Positions 55,125 to 64,000 of a stretch of DNA of 64,000 nt are shown here, in pieces; within the stretch, counting starts at the first letter, position 1, and every line of letters begins with the position of its first letter. The notes under the pieces are model-generated. The model was not told the DNA's origin, made no database searches, and saw only the letters and a program-made list of their open reading frames with translations. Position numbers and translations under genes: made by a program. The stretch covers positions 124,001 through 188,000 of the forward strand of contig OZ251252.1 of assembly GCA_965240325.2 (NCBI GenBank). Reading direction: 5' to 3'. Source of the stretch: Rebecca billardiae RCC1528. Taxonomy: Eukaryota; Protista; Haptophyta.

Positions 55125-58100
55125 ATGGTGCCGAGCAGCGTCGAGCGCGAGCTGCGCGCGCTGCAGCGCGAGCTCGACCGGGCGGCGCCGCCCGCGTGGC
55201 CGCCGCCGGGCGACGGCGCGGAGGCGTACATCTTCTCGCTCCACGCCTCGCCGCTGCGCGCGCACCACCACGCCGCCGCCTCTGGCGGCGGCGCGCCGCC
55301 GCCGCCGTCCGCCGCGGCCGCCGGCGCCGCCGCGTCGATCGAGCACCCGGCGGCGGGCGCGGAGCTGGCGTTCGCGCGGCGCGAGGTGGCGGACCTGGAG
55401 CGCGCGCTCGGATACACCACGCAGGCGCTCGCAGCCGAGCGCGTCGAGGCGCGCCAGCTGCGCGCAGAGCTCGAGCGCTCGCGCACCGCCGCGGCCGCGC
55501 TGCGCGCCGAGCTCGCGCGCGCGGACGAGGCGGAGGCGTCGCTCGGCGCGGCGCGCGCGGAGGCGCGCGCCGGCCGCGCGGCGGTGTCGCGCGTCCGCGC
55601 GCTCTCCGTCGGCGGCGGCGGCGGCGTGGACGAGGCGGAGCGCGCGGCGGAGCGCGCGGCGCGCGCGCACGCGCTGCGCGCGCTGTGCGCGCCCGCGCTC
55701 GGTGCGTGGCGCGAGCGAACTGTCGGCGGCGAGGGCGCGTGGGCGCGGCACGGCGGCGGGCTGCGCCGCGCAGCGCAGGGCGGCCGCCGCGCCTCCGCCG
55801 CCGACCGCTCCACCGCCGCCGTCGCCGCCCTCGCGCGCCGCGTCCTGCGCGAGCGGCAGCGGCGGCGCGCGCTGGAGGCGATGCGCGCCGCGGCCGAGGC
55901 GGCGGCGCGCACGGCCGCGGCCGCGCGCTCCGCGCTCGCGCTGTGGAGCGGCGCGCGCGCGCGCCGCGCGTGGGTGAGCGTGTGGGCGCCGCGCGCGCGC
56001 GCCCACGCGCGCGCGCTGCGCGCCGCGCGCGCCGCGCTCGTGGGGCGCCGCGCGCTGCGCGCGTGGCGCGCGCAGCGCGCGGCCGCGCGCGGCGCGGCCG
56101 CGGCGCGCGCCGGCGGCGCGCGCTGGCGAGCGCAGTCAGCCGCGCGCGCCACGCGCGCGTGGCGCGCGGCGGCGGCGGCGCGCTCCGCGGCGGCGCGCGC
56201 GGCGCGTGTGGCGGCGCGCCAGTGGCGCGGCGACGCGCGCGCGCGCGCGCTGCGCGCGTGGCGCGCGGACGCGGCGCGCGCGCAGCGCGCGCGGCGCGCG
56301 CTCGGCGGCGCGCTCGCGCGCTGGCGGCGCGCCGAGCGCGCGCGCGCGCTGCGCGCGTGGGCGGACGCGTGCGCCGCGCGCGTGGCGGCGCGGCGCGGCG
56401 AGCGCGTGGCGGCGGAGGCGCGGCGTCATCCGCGCCGCGCGCGCGCGCGCGCCGCGCTGCGCGCCTGGCGCCGCGCCGCGCGCGCGCGCGCCGACGGCTC
56501 GCGCGCGCGGCGCGCGGCCGCGGCGCGCGCGCGCTGGCCTGCGGCGCTTGGCGCCGCGCTGCGCGCCGCGCTGCGCGCCGTTGCAGCGGCCGACCTCGCG
56601 CTGGGCGTGGGCGGGTACGCGGAGGGTGGCGGCGGCGGGCACGGCGTCGCGGCGGCCGGCGCCGCGCGCACGCAGCTCGGCAGCGAGCCGCCTACGCCGC
56701 TGCGCGCGGCGGGGGCCGAGCTGGCGGGGGCCAAGGCCGCGGACGGCGCGGGCGCCGCGGCGGCGGCGCCTGTCGCGCCGCGCGCCGCCGCCACTGGCGG
56801 CGTCGGCGGCGGCGGCGCCGATGGCACCGCGCCCGCCGGGCTCTCGTCGCCGCGCGCGCGCGCGGAGGCGCGCGCCAGCCTCGGCGGCGCCGCCGGCGCC
56901 ACCGCGCCCGACGCCGCCGCCGCCGCGCAGAATGACGCCCCTACCGCGGCCGCGCTCGCGCGGCTTGCGACACAGCTGGCGGAGGCGGAGGCGCGCGTGG
57001 CCGCGGCGTGCGCGGAGCTGCCGCGGCTGCGCGCGCGCGGCGGCGGTGGCGGCGTGGGCTGGGAGGCGGTGCTCGGCGGCAGCGGCGTGGGCTACTCCGC
57101 CGAGCCCTGGCTCGCCGACGGCCCCGCCGGCCTCGCCGCCACCAACGCCGCGGCAGCCGCGGCAGCCGCGGCCGCCGCCGCCGCCGCCGCCGCCGCCGCG
57201 GCCGACGCGGATGCGGACGACGGACCCGACGACGAGCAGCGATCGCTGGCCGCGCTGACGGCGCACACGTGCGGCGCGGCGCTCGCGTGCGCGCGCGGGC
57301 GGCTGCGCGACGCGACGCGCCACGCCGCCGAGGCGCACGTCTCCTCCGCCCTCGACTCGGAACTGCATGCGCTGCAGCAGCAGCAGGCAGCACTTCGGCG
57401 CTCGCACGCGGACCTGGCCGCGGCGCTTGCGGCGGTTTCGGCGGTGCTGCGGGGCGACGCGGCCAAGCCCGCCGCGTCGCTGCAGGGCGCGGCGGCGGCG
57501 CTCGAGGGCGTGCAGGCGCAGCTGCGCGCCGCGCTCGCCGACGCCGCCGACGCGCGCGCGGCGGAGGCGGCGCGCGCGGACGCGGCGGAGGGCGCGGGCG
57601 CGCGCGCGGCCGCGCTCGCGCGCGCCGGCGCGGTGCATGCGCGCGCGCTCGCCGCCGCGCTGCGCGACGCCGAGGCGGAGGCGGCGGCGGAGGCGGAGGC
57701 GCGGCGCGGCGCGGAGGCCGAGTGCGCCGAGCTCACCGACGCCGTCCACTTCCTCCGCCGCCTCGCCGCCGTGGACGCGCGCGAACACACGGCGCGCGCC
57801 AACGCCGTCGGCGCACACGTGGCGGAGGCGGAGGCGGAGGCGCAAACGGCGCGCGAGCTGTCGCTCGGGCTCGCCGCCGCGCTCGGCGACGCGCTGGACG
57901 GCGTGGCGGGCGCGGAGGCGCTCGCGGCGCACGCGGCCGCGCTCGGCGCGCGCCTCGCGCCCGGCGCGGGCAGCGTGCCCTGGGCGGAGCTGAGGGAGGC
58001 GGCGGCGGCGCTCGCGCCGCGCGCGGCCGGCGGCTCTGGTGGCGGCCGCGTGCCGCCGGCGCTCGCGGCGGAGGCGGGGCGGCCGGTACAGCACCGCTAC

Positions 58101-58707: not shown

Positions 58708-60540
58708 ATGGCGGCGGTCGGCGACTGCGAGCCGCTCGCGGCGGTCGCGCCCGTCGAGGTGCTCGACGCGCCGCCGGACGCGCGCAGCTTCTTCGAGCGG
58801 TACGTGGTGACGTGCACTCCCGTCCTCATGCGCGGCGCCGCCGACGCGTGGCCCGCGCGCCAGCCCGGCGGCGCGCGCGCGTGGACGGCCGAACGGCTGC
58901 GCGCGGCGCACGGCGACGCGATCGTCGCGGTCGCGCCGCTGCCGACCGTGGGCGCGCACGCGCGGTATGACAAGTCGATCGAGCCGGCGAACGCCTGGCG
59001 AGAAGCCGCGCCCGCCGAGACACGCCACGCCGCGCCCGCCGCCGCGCCCGCCTCGGCGGCCGCGGCCGCGGCCGCGGGCGGCGACGACCACACGGCCGCG
59101 GCGGCGGGCGCGGCGGCGGGCGCGGTGCGCGCGGACGCCGTGCTCGCGGTCGCGGCGGAGCGCGTGCCCATCCGCCTCGCCACGCTGCTCGACGTGCTCG
59201 CGGACGACGCCGCGGCGCTCGAGGCCGGCGCGCACGGCAGAGGCGTCACGTTTTACGCGGACGGAGCGGCCAACCTTGGCCGCCATTTTGATTTCCTCGC
59301 GGCCGACGTGTGCCCGCCGGCGTGCGGCGCGCTGCTCAAGCCGCGCCGCGCGGCCGAGGCGGGCGCGGAGGCGTCGCTCTGGTTCGGCGGCGCCACCGTC
59401 TCGCGCTGCCACTACGACAACACCGACAACCTCTTCACTCAAGTCGCGGGCACGAAAACTTTCGCGCTCGTGCCGCCGCGCGCGGCCGAGGCGGCGCGGC
59501 CGGGCGCGCTTCGCAAGGTGTACGCGGTGTGGCAGCCGCCGAGCGGGCCGGCGGAGGCGGCGGCGGCGAGGGAAGAGGGCGCGCGCTTCTCGCGGCGCGG
59601 CGCCGACGGCGCGCGCTTCTCCGACGAGCAGGTGCTCAACTACTGGCCGGAGCACCTGCAGCTGCGCGTGTGCGCGGCCGCGGCGCGCGCGGCCGCGGCG
59701 CCCGCGGCCGCGGCGCGCGCCGAGGGCGGCGCGACGGGCGACGGTGGCGTCGGCGTTGGCTGGGCGCGCGCCGCGCCGGACGCGGCGGACGAGCTCGTGG
59801 TGACCGACCCGCACGCCGCAGCCCTCGCCCTCGCCACCCCCGCGCCGCACGACGCCCCTCCCTCCGCCACCCCCTCTCCGTTCCTCCTTGCGGGCCGCGC
59901 GCGCGGCGGCGCGCGGCTGCCGTGCGCGCTGGTGAGCGTGCGGCCTGGGGAGACGCTGTACCTGCCGTTCGGCTGGTGGCACGAGGTGTGGGGGCGGCCG
60001 ACGAGCGCGGCGGAGGGCGGGCTGTGCGCGAGCGTCTCGCACTTCTACGCGCCCTTCTACTGCCGCGCGCGCGCGCCGGCAGACGGCCGGATCGGCGCGG
60101 TCCGGGTAAACCCCCGCTATTCGCTGCTCGCGCGCGCGGCCGCGGCGGGCGCGCTCGGCGCGGCGGCCGCGGCGGCGCGGCGGCGGCGGGACGCGGCCGC
60201 GGCAGGCGGGACGCGCGCGCCGTCGCACGCCCCGGCGTCCTCCTCCGCGTCCTCCTCCGCCGAGGACGAGGCCGCGCAGTCCGACTCGGAGGAGGCCGAG
60301 CCGTGCTTACCTGCCGGCCACGTGCGCGACGGCGCGACGACTGATGATGTCGATGATGATGGCGACGGTCCGGGCCCCGCCCGGCCCCGGGCCGTGCAGC
60401 AGGCGGCGGCGGCGGATGCGAGGCCCGGCGCCGCCCCCGGCGCGCGCGCGGCCGCTTATGCAGCAGTCGTCGATCGTCGCATCGTCATCGTGAATCGTGA
60501 CCGGATCGTCGAATCCGCGCGAGCATCATCATATTGCTGA
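58708..60540 (+). CDS. JmjC/cupin-8 2-oxoglutarate oxygenase (JMJD5/JMJD7/FIH-like)
   Basis: FFERYV..PVLMRG..WPA..WT, LWFGGATVSRCHYDNTDNLFTQVAGTKTFALVPP and VRPGETLYLPFGWWHEV (HxD..H triad). Confidence 0.9.
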   Translation: MAAVGDCEPLAAVAPVEVLDAPPDARSFFERYVVTCTPVLMRGAADAWPARQPGGARAWTAERLRAAHGDAIVAVAPLPTVGAHARYDKSIEPANAWREAAPAETRHAAPAAAPASAAAAAAAGGDDHTAAAAGAAAGAVRADAVLAVAAERVPIRLATLLDVLADDAAALEAGAHGRGVTFYADGAANLGRHFDFLAADVCPPACGALLKPRRAAEAGAEASLWFGGATVSRCHYDNTDNLFTQVAGTKTFALVPPRAAEAARPGALRKVYAVWQPPSGPAEAAAAREEGARFSRRGADGARFSDEQVLNYWPEHLQLRVCAAAARAAAAPAAAARAEGGATGDGGVGVGWARAAPDAADELVVTDPHAAALALATPAPHDAPPSATPSPFLLAGRARGGARLPCALVSVRPGETLYLPFGWWHEVWGRPTSAAEGGLCASVSHFYAPFYCRARAPADGRIGAVRVNPRYSLLARAAAAGALGAAAAAARRRRDAAAAGGTRAPSHAPASSSASSSAEDEAAQSDSEEAEPCLPAGHVRDGATTDDVDDDGDGPGPARPRAVQQAAAADARPGAAPGARAAAYAAVVDRRIVIVNRDRIVESARASSYC

Positions 60541-61447: not shown

Positions 61448-63662
61448 TCATTGTTCCCACGGCGGGATGCAGGTGGGGAAGATGACGTTGTACTCGAGCA
61501 GCAGCGAGAACACGAGGAAGATGAAGTAGAGGAGCATCATCGAGTAGCTGCGCGGCAGGCGAGGAGGGCGGGGTCGGGGCGGGGGCCACGTGCGCGCGTG
61601 TGTGCCGCAGCCACATCCAACAGCCAGCCACACAGCCGCGGCGGTTGGGCGGGCGCAGCGGCGACGGGGCAGCGGGCGGACGGGGCCGCCGGCAGGCGCA
61701 CGGGTGCAGCGGCTGCGCGCGTGACGCTCGGCCGCGCGGCTGGCCAGCGTGGCGGTGTGCCCCCGTGTCTCGCTCGCGCGCGCGCGCCGGCGCGCGCGCG
61801 CTTGTGCCGCCCTGCTGCCGCGCACCCGAGCCTCTTGAGCAGCTGCCAGCCGCTCAGGTGGATGATGATGATCACCGCGGCGACCATGAGGAAGAGCAGC
61901 GAGATCATCAGCGCCAGCCCTGCGGCACGCACGCAGCGGGCGCGGGGCGCGTGCGGGCAGCCAGCCGGCCGCGGGTGAGGCGCACGCCGCGCGCACGCCG
62001 GCCGCGCGGCGGTGCGGCGCCCGGCGCTTGGCTGCGGCGCTCACCCTCTGACTGGATGGTGACGTCGGTGCCCATGATAGTGGTGAAGAGGAACCACGGG
62101 ACGGGCAGGCCGATGAGGATGTCGAAGATGTTCGAGCCCAGCGAGGAGGACACCGCCATGTCGCCGTGCCCCTTCCGCGCGACCGCCATGCTGGAGAGGC
62201 AGTCCGGGATGGACGTGCCGCCAGCCAGCAGCGTCAGCCCCATCACCGGCGCCGGGATATTCGCCGTGATGCCGAGCTCTGTCGCCATCCAGACCATGAA
62301 GTAGGAGAGAAAGGCGATCCACACGATGGACATGAGGAAGGTGGCGAAGAAGAAGCGCTTGAACAGCGGGCGCCTGCAGTCCGGGATCGTCAGCCACATG
62401 CTCAGCAGCAGCGGGAACGACAGCGCCCACACGAACCGACCGGTCGCAGAGCTCGGGAGTTCAAACGGATTCGACGGCTCGTTGTCGTCATCGTCCTCGC
62501 CCTCGCCGCCGCCGTCGTCCGCGCCGCCGTCGGCGTCGGCGTCGGCGGGGTCGGGCCCGTGCTCCGCCGCGGCGGCGATCCCCGCCGCCACCCCGCGCCC
62601 GCCGCCCGCCTCCGTGTCCTCGTCCCCCGGCGCGAACGCCCGCGGCCGCGGCCGCTCGTGCGCCGCGGCCGCTCGCACGAGCGCGTCGCCGCCGCCGTCG
62701 GCGTCACCCATCGCCTCCGTGGTGAACGAGGCGTCGTCGGCGGGCACGGTGGGCACCGCGGGCACCGCGGCGGGCGCGGTCTTGCACGCGTGCGCCGGCT
62801 GCGCCTCCGCCTCGGTGTTCGCGCGCGCCGCGCGCTCCCCCGCCGAGTACCGCGCCTCCGCCCCTCTCCACTCGGGCTCCGCTCGCTTAGTGAGCGCGCC
62901 GAGCGCCGCCGCCGCCTTTGGCCTGTGGCCGATGGCGTGGTGGGCAGCGGCGTGGTGGTTGCCCTCCGGGGCGACGCGCACGATGGAGGGGCGGTGGCCC
63001 GAGGGCTGCACGCTCTCCCCGCCCGGCCGCTCGGCGCCGCCCAGCACCTGCTCGAAGAACGTGCGCTCCGCCGACAGGTGCACCTGCTGGCTCAGCGGGA
63101 TCGTGCCCGTGGGCGCGAGATTGAAATCTCCCTCGCGCACCTGCGTCGCGTTGTCGCGGTACGACTTTGCGAGCAGCCGGTAGAGCCGCGCGGCGCGGAG
63201 CACGCGCACGACGCGGATGAAGCGGAGCACGCGCAGCCCCGACGCCGTGCCCGAGCCCGTCCACGCCAGCTCGACGATGATCAGCAGCACGAGCACGCCG
63301 TCGAAGACGTTCAGCGCGTCCTGCCAGCACTGGAAGAACCCATAGCTGTACAGCTTGAGCGCAATCTCGGCGATGAAGATTGCGGCGCACGCGAGGTTGA
63401 CGCCTTCGAGCACGGCGGAGGCGAAGAGGTTGGAGAAGATGACCATGAAGACGTTCACCACGATCACCGCCATGATAAAGTACACGAACGGCTTCGACTC
63501 CACCAGCACCACCAGCCGCTCGCGGTGCGGCGGCCGCGGCTGCGTCTGCGCCTCGTACACCTTCCGCTCCGTCCACGCCTGCAAGGACTCGTTGTAATAC
63601 ATGATCGAGATATACCCGGCGTATAGGAAGAGCAGCGCGAGCGACTCCCACCAGGTCACCGC
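61448..63662 (-). CDS. K+-dependent Na+/Ca2+ exchanger (NCKX/SLC24-like), 3' part, with an inserted voltage-sensor domain; exons complement(61448..61547,61826..61919,62045..63662); 5' exons probably lie beyond the window
   Basis: TM5 VTWWESLALLFLYAGYISIMYYN, LTIPDCR..FFFATFLMSIVWIAFLSYFMVW and the alpha-2 repeat GLTLLAGGTSIPDCLSS..GDMAVSSSLGSNIFDILIGLPVPW. Canonical introns give a continuous frame to the stop at 61448. Confidence 0.92.
63165..63500 (-). other. Voltage-sensor domain (S1-S4) within the NCKX loop
   Basis: S1 ESKPFVYFIMAVIVVN; S2 NLACAAIFIAEIALKLYSYG; S3 WQDALNVFDGVLVLL; S4 LRVLRFIRVVRVLRAARLYRLL. Confidence 0.9.
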
Positions 63663-64000
63663 CTGCGCGCCGCACGCGCGGGCGCGCGAGAGCGCGCAGC
63701 CCGCCAGCCAGCCGACGCGGGGGCGCCGGGCGCACGGGTGAGCCCTCTGCCTCCGCCTCTGCCTCCGCCCGTCTCGCTCGGCAGCGCGCGCGCGCTGCGC
63801 CCGGCCGCGGGCGCGCGTCCGCCCACGCACAGGCGACGCGCCGGGCGGAGCGGCCCGCGAGGGCGTAGGGCGCACCGCGTGCGCGTGCACTGCCCACCCA
63901 GTCCACGCAGGCCGGGCCCCGCGCGGCCGCGCCGTGGCGGCGCGCGCACGACGGGCCACCGCCACGCGGACGGCGCGCGGGGCGCACCGCGCGCGCTGCC

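What the first reader, a model, noticed from the sequence alone, without database searches (positions are those of the whole stretch)
61448..63662. Candidate voltage-gated Na+/Ca2+-K+ exchanger: NCKX with an in-frame S1-S4 voltage sensor in its central loop
Seen: one uninterrupted exon (62045-63662) encodes NCKX TM5, then a four-helix module, an acidic loop, and the NCKX C-terminal half with an intact alpha-2 repeat (GTSIPD; GSNIFD). The module has Nav/Cav-type VSD hallmarks: S2 F..E...K, S3 N.FD, and an S4 with seven Arg at every third position. No pore (S5-S6) follows. Established: SLC24 exchangers have a soluble TM5-TM6 loop, and the GSNIFD Asp is tied to K+ dependence. Pore-less VSDs regulate VSP, Hv1 and the sperm Na+/H+ exchanger SLC9C1. 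Inference: a 4-TM insert preserves exchanger topology, so this may be an independently evolved voltage-regulated secondary transporter coupling membrane potential to Ca2+ extrusion. I do not recall such an NCKX being characterised.
Basis: partly seen in the sequence, partly recalled or inferred. Interest (0 to 1): 0.93.

Follow-up and report, generated by a model that had tools for sequence, protein, structure and literature searches.

The report
Calcium exchanger with built-in voltage sensor
This alga's gene, like relatives in many marine protists, places an intact channel-type voltage sensor inside a calcium-exporting exchanger; if the sensor controls transport, this would be only the second known kind of voltage-gated transporter.

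Summary
On the minus strand, one exon (63662-62045) plus two short exons (61919-61826, 61547-61448) encode NCKX TM5, a complete S1-S4 voltage-sensor domain (VSD), a hydrophilic acidic loop with no pore, and the NCKX alpha-2 half.

Pfam finds Ion_trans (1.1e-17, S1-S4 part only) and Na_Ca_ex (3.4e-23). The VSD is Cav/Nav-like by sequence and fold. It is neither a chimera nor a one-off:
- At least 74 related proteins carry Na_Ca_ex - Ion_trans - Na_Ca_ex. Named sources are Hondaea, Mucochytrium, Mataza and a mainly haptophyte cluster.
- One relative is an uninterrupted gene on 13 metagenome contigs. Two are transcriptome-derived.
- The S2 Glu and S3 Asp are invariant (74/74), the S2 aromatic is always F or Y, and S4 R1-R6 are basic in at least 70/74. 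The NCKX Ca2+/K+-site Asp residues are also invariant.

The most likely function is voltage-gated K+-dependent Na+/Ca2+ exchange. This is inferred, not shown. The alpha-1 half lies beyond the window end, and no sequencing runs were listed for this genome.

I found no paper describing this architecture. Papers from 2023 and 2024 name SLC9C1 as the only VSD-regulated transporter. The scan also flagged this locus from an overlapping window. Verdict: a new variant of a known kind, of high interest.

The parts
63663..64000 (-). Upstream intron (partial). The alpha-1 half of the gene lies beyond the window end.
   Evidence: No codon periodicity (GC1/2/3 = 0.84/0.83/0.89). No tblastn match to residues 1-260 of relatives. 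A CAG acceptor sits at 63665-63663.
62045..63662 (-). Exon A: NCKX TM5, VSD, acidic loop and alpha-2 half in one uninterrupted reading frame.
   Evidence: ORF and splice sites. Pfam Ion_trans 1.1e-17 and Na_Ca_ex 3.4e-23. GC3 0.92-0.96 throughout.
63546..63662 (-). NCKX TM5 and the basic cytosolic linker leading to S1.
   Evidence: Aligns with TM5 (..ESxxLLxxYxxYxxIMYxNE..) of all relatives and of VSD-less NCKXs.
63426..63494 (-). VSD helix S1, with an invariant Asn (N70, codon 63455-63453).
   Evidence: AF2 model of the window's VSD, helix 18-40. N is 74/74.
63342..63416 (-). VSD helix S2: N89, F96, E99 and K103 (charge-transfer centre).
   Evidence: AF2 helix 44-68. N 74/74, F/Y 74/74, E 74/74, K/R 74/74. 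Aligns with the Cav2.2 VSD-IV S2.
63255..63317 (-). VSD helix S3: N118-x-F-D121 and E131.
   Evidence: AF2 helix 77-97. D 74/74, N/D 74/74, E/D 74/74.
63150..63245 (-). VSD helix S4: seven Arg at every third position (R144 to R162, codons 63233 to 63177).
   Evidence: Sequence. AF2 helix 101-132. R1-R6 are basic in at least 70/74 relatives.
62478..63146 (-). Hydrophilic low-complexity loop with no TM segment (no S5-S6). It holds a partly conserved post-S4 T-Q-V motif and an acidic run (62478-62552) before TM6.
   Evidence: Maximum Kyte-Doolittle 0.67. Composition A50 G29 E20 D18 P18. T 42/74 and Q 51/74. The DDDDD..NPFE.P consensus appears in relatives.
62046..62477 (-). NCKX C-terminal half, first part: TM6 onward and the alpha-2 repeat, with GTSIPD (62219-62202) and GSNIFD (62138-62121).
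   Evidence: Pfam Na_Ca_ex. PDB sequence hits to NCLX, NCX_Mj and NCX1 at 1e-10 to 6e-8. Both Asp residues are 74/74 in VSD-bearing and 28/28 in VSD-less NCKXs.
61920..62044 (-). Intron 1 (125 nt, GT..AG).
   Evidence: No codon periodicity.
61826..61919 (-). Exon B: penultimate TM helix (LALMISLLFLMVAAVIIIIHLSGWQLLKRLG).
   Evidence: In-frame splice. tblastn to P0003 residues 653-688.
61548..61825 (-). Intron 2 (278 nt, GT..AG).
61448..61547 (-). Exon C: last TM helix and the stop codon (TGA at 61450-61448).
   Evidence: In-frame splice. tblastn to P0003 residues 689-709.

Best explanation
The locus encodes the C-terminal 603 residues of a K+-dependent Na+/Ca2+ exchanger (SLC24/NCKX type). Its cytosolic TM5-TM6 loop carries an inserted, intact, pore-less S1-S4 voltage-sensor domain of the Cav/Nav type.

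The gene belongs to an old, conserved protist family, seen in labyrinthulomycetes, a cercozoan, a mainly haptophyte cluster and this alga. The proposed mechanism has four steps:
1. The exchanger core moves Ca2+ plus K+ against Na+, as in other NCKXs.
2. The VSD sits in the same membrane in canonical orientation.
3. Its S4 arginines move through a conserved Phe/Glu/Asp charge-transfer centre when membrane potential changes.
4. That movement is passed to the exchanger, so that Ca2+ extrusion or reverse-mode entry is switched by voltage beyond the exchanger's own electrogenicity. The route could be the short TM5-S1 linker, the post-S4 segment, or direct helix packing.

What is shown: the architecture, the fold, the conservation of sensing and ion-site residues, and the family's spread. 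What is inferred: that S4 moves, that it gates transport, the polarity of gating, and which membrane the protein sits in.
For: - Domain calls: Ion_trans (S1-S4 part only) lies between the Na_Ca_ex halves in the window ORF and in 8 relatives tested.
- VSD identity by sequence: Cav2.2 at 1e-20, NavMs at 1e-10, TPTE2 at 5.6e-6. The family profile hits Cav3.2 at 6.5e-72.
- VSD identity by fold: the AF2 model of the window's VSD has pLDDT 86. All top Foldseek hits are VSDs, with TM 0.6-0.74 to Cav2.x, NavAb, Ci-VSP, CatSper and TPC1.
- Full-length relative: the P0003 model has pLDDT 79 and pTM 0.76. Its exchanger core matches NCLX, NCX1 and NCX_Mj, and its VSD matches TPC, Nav and Cav. An ESM Atlas model of that cluster's representative (732 aa) superposes at TM 0.76 over 600 residues, so the predicted VSD placement agrees.
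- Purifying selection on sensing residues: in 74 members the S2 Glu, S3 Asp, S1 Asn and S2 Asn are invariant. The S2 position is always aromatic. S4 R1-R6 are basic in at least 70/74.
- Exchanger sites are intact: the alpha-2 Asp and the GSNIFD Asp are 74/74, and the alpha-1 Glu is 70/70 where present.
- Real gene, not a chimera: P0003 is an uninterrupted gene on 13 metagenome contigs. MMETSP transcriptome proteins from Mucochytrium and Mataza have the same order.
- One clustered origin: on a tree built from exchanger-only columns, 72 of 74 VSD-bearing proteins form one group (SH-aLRT 94), and a single origin is not excluded.
- The same loop is a known regulatory site: sister protist NCKXs carry EF-hands there.
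Against: - There are no functional data for any member.
- No RNA or DNA runs were listed for this genome, so retention of the VSD in this gene's mRNA is unverified.
- The alpha-1 half is outside the window.
- S4 connects to TM6 only through a long, poorly conserved, low-confidence loop. A rigid S4-to-TM6 coupling of the channel or SLC9C1 kind is therefore not evident.
- Model coordinates could not be inspected, so the VSD-exchanger interface is unknown.
Confidence: 0.65

Rival explanations
1. The VSD senses voltage but does not gate transport. Instead it controls something else, such as partner proteins, clustering with channels, trafficking or lipid interactions. The exchanger would then serve mainly as its membrane anchor or co-localised Ca2+ sink.
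For: The S4-to-TM6 connection is a long, floppy, unconserved loop. No conserved rigid coupling helix was identified.
Against: The VSD is inserted inside the transporter between its two inverted repeats, at the loop that holds regulatory modules in related exchangers. EF-hands occupy it in sister NCKXs, and CBDs occupy it in NCX1 by established knowledge. AF2 and ESM Atlas models of two relatives agree on a packed arrangement.
Confidence: 0.12
2. The VSD is a structural relic that no longer responds to voltage. It would be a spacer or folding or oligomerisation module within the loop.
For: Non-sensing VSD-like domains exist, for example some TPC and NALCN repeats (established knowledge).
Against: The residues that matter only for charge transfer are invariant or nearly so across proteins that are otherwise 41-73% identical. 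These are the S2 aromatic and Glu, the S3 Asp, and six S4 basic positions.
Confidence: 0.08
3. The VSD itself conducts ions, as an Hv1-like proton path or an omega pore. The protein would then be a bifunctional channel and exchanger.
For: Pore-less VSDs can conduct, as Hv1 does.
Against: S4 carries a full ladder of Arg, and the hydrophobic and aromatic plug residues are conserved: S1 Ile 72/74 and S2 F/Y 74/74. The S1 polar residue is an invariant Asn rather than an acid. PDB sequence hits are led by Cav, Nav, TPC and VSP, with no Hv1 in the top 60. No direct alignment to Hv1 was made.
Confidence: 0.07
4. It is an artefact. Either the assembly or gene model fuses a channel fragment to an NCKX, or the locus is a pseudogene.
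For: The alpha-1 half and transcripts were not observable for this gene.
Against: The reading frame is single and open, with strong codon periodicity across both junctions. Relatives have the same junctions on 13 independent contigs and in transcriptomes. All invariant family residues are intact in the window's copy.
Confidence: 0.02

Closest known systems
[quoted passage not shown]
   Same: It is a secondary active ion exchanger joined in one chain to a canonical, pore-less S4-type VSD. [quoted passage not shown]
   Different: The transporter fold is unrelated (CPA/NHE versus CaCA/NCKX). In SLC9C1 the VSD is appended after the transporter and followed by a CNBD, and a long S4 is embedded in a cytosolic helix network. 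Here the VSD is inserted between the two inverted repeats, there is no CNBD, and S4 leads into a disordered acidic loop. SLC9C1 is a metazoan sperm protein, whereas this family was found in protists. The acquisitions are therefore independent.
Animal NCKX1-5 (SLC24A1-5) and Drosophila Nckx30C
   Same: The same exchanger core is present. It includes the alpha-1 GGSAPE (in relatives), the alpha-2 GTSxPD, the GSNIFD Asp linked to K+ dependence, the MYxNE motif after TM5, and an acidic stretch before TM6.
   Different: Animal NCKXs have a soluble TM5-TM6 loop with no TM helices. This family has four extra TM helices there. On the exchanger-only tree, the VSD-bearing proteins cluster apart from most VSD-less ones.
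Voltage-sensor domains of four-domain Cav/Nav channels and bacterial Nav (NavAb, NavMs)
   Same: These are the best sequence and fold matches. They share S2 F..E...K, S3 N.FD and the S4 Arg ladder.
   Different: There is no S4-S5 linker and no S5-P-S6 pore. The domain is single rather than one of four.
Ci-VSP / TPTE voltage-sensing phosphatases
   Same: A pore-less VSD controls a non-channel effector. The fold matches at TM 0.71, and TPTE2 is a sequence hit at 5.6e-6.
   Different: The effector there is a soluble enzyme attached after S4. Here the effector is a membrane transporter flanking the VSD on both sides.
NCX1 with CBD1/CBD2, and EF-hand-bearing protist NCKXs
   Same: A regulatory module sits in the TM5-TM6 loop of a CaCA exchanger (for the EF-hand NCKXs; established knowledge for NCX1).
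   Different: Those modules are soluble Ca2+ sensors. Here the module is a membrane-embedded voltage sensor.

Membership tests
SLC24 / NCKX (K+-dependent Na+/Ca2+ exchangers, CaCA superfamily) | Two Na_Ca_ex halves (alpha-1 and alpha-2 repeats) | tested here: inconclusive
   The alpha-2 half is present (Pfam 3.4e-23). The alpha-1 half lies outside the window. All full-length relatives have both halves.
SLC24 / NCKX (K+-dependent Na+/Ca2+ exchangers, CaCA superfamily) | Alpha-2 signature G-T-S-x-P-D with the Ca2+-site Asp | tested here: met
   GTSIPD lies at 62219-62202. The Asp is 74/74 in the family and 28/28 in VSD-less NCKXs, including animal ones.
SLC24 / NCKX (K+-dependent Na+/Ca2+ exchangers, CaCA superfamily) | Asp of G-S-N-I-F-D, tied to K+ dependence in NCKX2 (literature knowledge, not re-read here) | tested here: met
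   GSNIFD lies at 62138-62121. The Asp is 74/74 and 28/28.
SLC24 / NCKX (K+-dependent Na+/Ca2+ exchangers, CaCA superfamily) | K+-dependent Na+/Ca2+ exchange activity | not testable with these tools
   This needs flux or current measurements.
S4-type voltage-sensor domain (Pfam Ion_trans, S1-S4) | Four-helix S1-S4 bundle | tested here: met
   Pfam Ion_trans profile positions 2-110 of 241. AF2 pLDDT 86 with four long helices. All top Foldseek hits are VSDs.
S4-type voltage-sensor domain (Pfam Ion_trans, S1-S4) | S4 with basic residues at every third position | tested here: met
   Seven Arg, R144 to R162. These positions are conserved in 74 relatives.
S4-type voltage-sensor domain (Pfam Ion_trans, S1-S4) | Charge-transfer centre: S2 aromatic plus acid, and S3 acid | tested here: met
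   F96, E99 and D121 are present. Across the family they are F/Y 74/74, E 74/74 and D 74/74.
S4-type voltage-sensor domain (Pfam Ion_trans, S1-S4) | Measurable gating-charge movement | not testable with these tools
   This needs voltage clamp.
Voltage-gated cation channels (6-TM Ion_trans) | S5-P-S6 pore domain after S4 | tested here: not met
   The Pfam match stops at profile position about 110-116 of 241 in the window and in 8 relatives. There is no hydrophobic segment between S4 and NCKX TM6.
SLC9C1-type voltage-gated exchangers | NHE (CPA1) transporter domain plus C-terminal VSD plus CNBD | tested here: not met
   Only Na_Ca_ex and Ion_trans were found, with no NHE or cNMP-binding hit. The resemblance is in design principle, not homology.
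Hv1 voltage-gated proton channels | Stand-alone VSD with an S1 acidic selectivity residue and a short three-Arg S4 | tested here: inconclusive
   The domain is not stand-alone. S4 has 6-7 Arg. The conserved S1 polar residue is Asn in 74/74. No direct alignment to Hv1 was made.

The most novel reading that the evidence does not exclude
VSD-NCKX proteins would be a second, independently evolved class of voltage-gated secondary transporters. They are found in several marine protist lineages (a mainly haptophyte cluster, labyrinthulomycetes, a cercozoan). A Cav/Nav-type voltage sensor inserted between the two halves of a K+-dependent Na+/Ca2+ exchanger would switch Ca2+ extrusion on or off with membrane potential. 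This would tie Ca2+ clearance directly to electrical excitability in single-celled eukaryotes.
Probability: 0.6. Interest if true: 0.9.

Novelty: new variant of a known kind. Interest (0 to 1): 0.8.

Why it matters
Voltage sensors are known to control channels, one phosphatase family and a single transporter, SLC9C1. A second transporter family from an unrelated fold, with the sensor inserted inside the transporter rather than appended, would have three consequences:
- It would show that VSD-to-carrier coupling evolved more than once.
- It would offer a compact system for studying how S4 movement can control alternating access. Some members are intronless and only 650-730 aa long.
- It would suggest that marine protists, including ecologically dominant haptophytes, tie Ca2+ extrusion directly to membrane excitability.

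The claim is directly testable by heterologous expression. It may also offer a scaffold for engineering voltage-controlled transport.

Tried and rejected
- **Sequencing runs.** I searched for RNA runs and then for any runs holding the locus. None was listed. Splicing of this gene remains unverified.
- **Finding the alpha-1 half.** tblastn of three relatives against the whole window found nothing for their N-terminal 250-260 residues. A degenerate DNA pattern for the window's TM5 peptide found no metagenome contig.
- **Literature.** Nine full-text searches combined VSD or voltage sensor with NCKX, SLC24, CaCA, Pfam names, protists, algae, coccolithophores and Foldseek. One further query failed on syntax. 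None returned a paper on this architecture. The E. huxleyi paper listing NCKX paralogues does not mention a VSD.
- **AFDB cluster search.** It returned only ordinary NCKXs plus one fragment, with organisms masked, so it added little.
- **Assembly chimera or pseudogene.** Rejected on the continuous frame, codon periodicity and conserved junctions in relatives.
- **Truncated channel.** Rejected because there is no pore and NCKX sequence lies on both sides in the same exon.
- **Not attempted.** I could not inspect model coordinates for the VSD-exchanger interface, because the tools do not expose them. I did not run a coevolution analysis, because there are too few sequences. I did not search for the nearest non-NCKX VSD donor, because the top of any search is saturated by family members.
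Full report
**1. What is in the sequence**

The feature lies on the minus strand. A 685-codon open frame (63965-61908) contains the real exon, which starts after a CAG acceptor at 63662 and ends at a GT donor after 62045.

Splicing to two short downstream exons (61919-61826 and 61547-61448, ending in TGA) uses GT-AG introns of 125 and 278 nt and keeps the frame. This yields 603 residues. A 712-aa relative, P0003, aligns collinearly with all three exons by tblastn (residues 261-709). Its first 260 residues find nothing anywhere in the window. The N-terminal alpha-1 half of the gene must therefore lie beyond position 64000.

Codon-position GC supports coding across all of exon A. This holds for TM5, the VSD, the low-complexity loop and the alpha-2 part, where GC3 is 0.92-0.96 and GC2 is 0.38-0.60. 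Positions 63663-63998 and intron 1 lack this periodicity.

**2. Domain identity**

- Pfam finds Ion_trans at 1.1e-17, matching only profile positions 2-110 of 241 (S1-S4). It finds Na_Ca_ex at 3.4e-23.
- The 135-residue sensor segment alone hits solved Cav2.2 (1e-20), Cav3.x, Nav VSD-II, bacterial NavMs (1e-10), the voltage-sensing phosphatase TPTE2 (5.6e-6) and TPC1.
- A profile of 63 family VSDs hits Cav3.2 at 6.5e-72, then Cav1, Nav, NALCN and TPC1.
- An AF2 model of the window's own VSD has pLDDT 86 and pTM 0.73, with a pre-S1 helix and four long helices.
- Every top Foldseek PDB hit to that model is a VSD: Cav2.1 and Cav2.2 at TM 0.73-0.74, NavAb 0.67, Ci-VSP 0.71, CatSper 0.74 and TPC1 0.70.
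- Between S4 and NCKX TM6 lie 223 hydrophilic residues rich in Ala, Gly, Glu, Asp and Pro. The maximum hydropathy is 0.67, so there is no pore domain.
- The alpha-2 part matches solved NCLX, NCX_Mj and NCX1 sequences. No NCKX structure appeared among these hits.

**3. It is a family, not an accident**

A homology search returned about 90 protein clusters whose precomputed Pfam content is PF00520 plus PF01699. The named sources are:
- Hondaea fermentalgiana and Mucochytrium quahogii, both labyrinthulomycetes (Mucochytrium from MMETSP).
- Mataza sp. D1, a cercozoan (MMETSP and EukProt).
- One NCBI entry, CAK9005813.1.
- A Tara/JGI/ENA cluster.

The ESM Atlas holds one cluster of 71 such proteins whose known phyla are mostly Haptophyta.

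Pfam on eight of these relatives (nine proteins scanned, one an EF-hand type) gives Ion_trans (S1-S4 part only) lying between the two Na_Ca_ex halves. P0003 is an uninterrupted 2139-nt gene flanked by other genes on 13 independent metagenome contigs, and the table lists its domains in that order.

A profile search of 1.84 billion representatives placed VSD-bearing proteins at the top, as single end-to-end matches. At least 25 representatives at 50% identity carry the sensor motif. Ordinary NCKXs follow as two separate half-matches.

On a tree built only from exchanger columns, 72 of 74 VSD-bearing proteins form one group (SH-aLRT 94). The well-supported branches do not exclude a single origin. 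The window's protein is sister to a 36-member subgroup containing the P0003 cluster.

**4. Conservation tells what is under selection**

Across 74 VSD-bearing members, which are 41-73% identical to P0003 overall, these positions are conserved:

| Position | Conservation |
|---|---|
| S1 Asn | 74/74 |
| S2 upper Asn | 74/74 |
| S2 aromatic | 64 Phe, 10 Tyr |
| S2 Glu | 74/74 |
| S2 Lys/Arg | 74/74 |
| S2-S3 Trp | 74/74 |
| S3 Asp | 74/74 |
| S3 Glu/Asp | 74/74 |
| S4 R1-R6 | basic in 70-74 of 74 |
| Alpha-2 Asp of GTSIPD | 74/74 |
| Asp of GSNIFD | 74/74 |
| Alpha-1 Glu | 70/70 where present |

The window's copy has every one of these residues, plus a seventh Arg. The two alpha-2 Asp residues are shared with animal NCKX1 and Nckx30C in the same alignment.

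This pattern is what one expects if both the voltage-sensing machinery and the K+-dependent Ca2+ site are in use.

**5. Topology (inference from sequence)**

The TM5-S1 linker, the S2-S3 turn and the post-S4 segment are rich in Lys/Arg. The S1-S2 and S3-S4 loops have none. By established knowledge, the TM5-TM6 loop of CaCA exchangers is cytosolic.

The sensor therefore has the canonical orientation, with the S1 N-terminus and the S4 C-terminus inside. Four extra helices leave the exchanger topology unchanged.

The full-length AF2 model of P0003 (pLDDT 79, pTM 0.76) has high confidence in S1-S3 and moderate confidence in S4. Confidence is low after S4. An ESM Atlas model of that cluster's representative (732 aa) superposes on it at TM 0.76 over 600 residues. 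The predicted placement of the sensor beside the exchanger therefore agrees between the two models. I could not inspect the coordinates.

**6. Most likely mechanism**

The exchanger core works as an NCKX. The VSD responds to membrane potential and modulates the transport cycle.

Coupling probably does not run through a rigid S4 extension as in SLC9C1, because S4 leads into a long, unconserved, low-confidence loop. Three candidate routes remain:
- The short basic TM5-S1 linker.
- A partly conserved T-Q-V/T motif a few residues after S4 (T 42/74, Q 51/74).
- Direct helix packing, or an electrostatic interaction between the S4 end and the conserved acidic run (DDDDD..NPFE.P) just before TM6.

The polarity of gating and the host membrane are unknown. 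NCKX transport is electrogenic (established knowledge). Two roles are plausible: blocking reverse-mode Ca2+ entry during depolarisation, or boosting extrusion after it. All of this paragraph is inference.

**7. Rivals**

I considered four alternatives:
- A sensor that controls something other than transport.
- A non-sensing relic.
- A conducting VSD.
- An artefact.

The conservation data argue against a relic. The intact Arg ladder and hydrophobic plug argue against conduction. Independent contigs and transcriptomes argue against an artefact. The first rival is the hardest to exclude.

**8. Comparison with what is known, and novelty**

A 2023 Nature paper and a 2024 review name SLC9C1 as the only transporter known to be regulated by a VSD (PMC10620092 and PMC13095418). 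Nine full-text searches found no paper describing an NCKX or any CaCA exchanger with a VSD. A paper listing six E. huxleyi NCKX paralogues does not mention one.

The proteins do exist in public databases with automatic names such as 'Sodium/potassium/calcium exchanger 1'. The sequences are therefore not new, but the architecture appears uncharacterised.

SLC9C1 differs from this family in three ways. Its transporter fold is unrelated (CPA versus CaCA). Its sensor is appended after the transporter rather than inserted within it. It also carries a CNBD. The resemblance is convergent design, not membership. I class the finding as a new variant of a known kind, namely VSD-coupled non-channel proteins.

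**9. Earlier scan notes**

The same locus was flagged from the overlapping window (s1-363192). Other notes report a pore-less VSD fused to a phosphodiesterase and another fused to a cyclase in this genome (s1-336722, s1-341161). I did not test those. They suggest, without showing, that this alga uses VSD fusions repeatedly. I call the organism an alga only on the strength of those notes.

**10. Limits**

- There is no transcript or read support for this gene.
- The alpha-1 half was not seen.
- There are no functional data for any member.
- Model coordinates could not be examined.
- The taxonomic range rests on a few named sequences.

Noticed in passing
window 58708-60540 (+): A 610-aa ORF just downstream, convergent with the exchanger gene, is a Cupin_8/JmjC-like protein (Pfam 5.7e-24). 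It has long Ala/Arg-rich low-complexity inserts.
   Followed up: partly
window 56000-58000: GC content is extreme here, at 0.82-0.91 in 500-nt windows. This is well above the 0.64-0.79 of the exchanger's coding parts.
   Followed up: no
relatives P0097, P0102, P0104, P0114: Sister protist NCKXs lack the VSD and instead carry EF-hand pairs, in P0097 between the Na_Ca_ex match at 142-296 and the C-terminal part. An Atlas cluster of such proteins is commonest in diatoms. This loop seems to be a hot spot for swapping regulatory modules.
   Followed up: partly
relatives P0015, P0028, P0038, P0044: Some family members have inserts within the VSD segment that make it 80-170 residues longer. In P0015 the insert is Cys-rich and lies between S1 and S2, so it is probably extracellular. 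This may add an external ligand-binding or adhesion part.
   Followed up: no
relatives, just after S4 (window residues 173-175, 63146-63138): A partly conserved T-Q-V/T motif, often followed by P/E-x-D-W/F, follows S4 in most members. It is a candidate coupling element.
   Followed up: partly
same genome, other pieces (earlier notes s1-336722, s1-341161): Earlier scan notes report pore-less VSDs fused to a class I phosphodiesterase and to a cyclase in this genome. With the VSD-NCKX, that would make three different VSD-effector fusions in one alga.
   Followed up: no
L001 4001-6139 and neighbours: The P0003 relative sits in a compact, apparently intron-poor genome next to a Glyco_transf_61 gene and a RabGAP-TBC gene. 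The same arrangement appears in several marine metagenomes.
   Followed up: no
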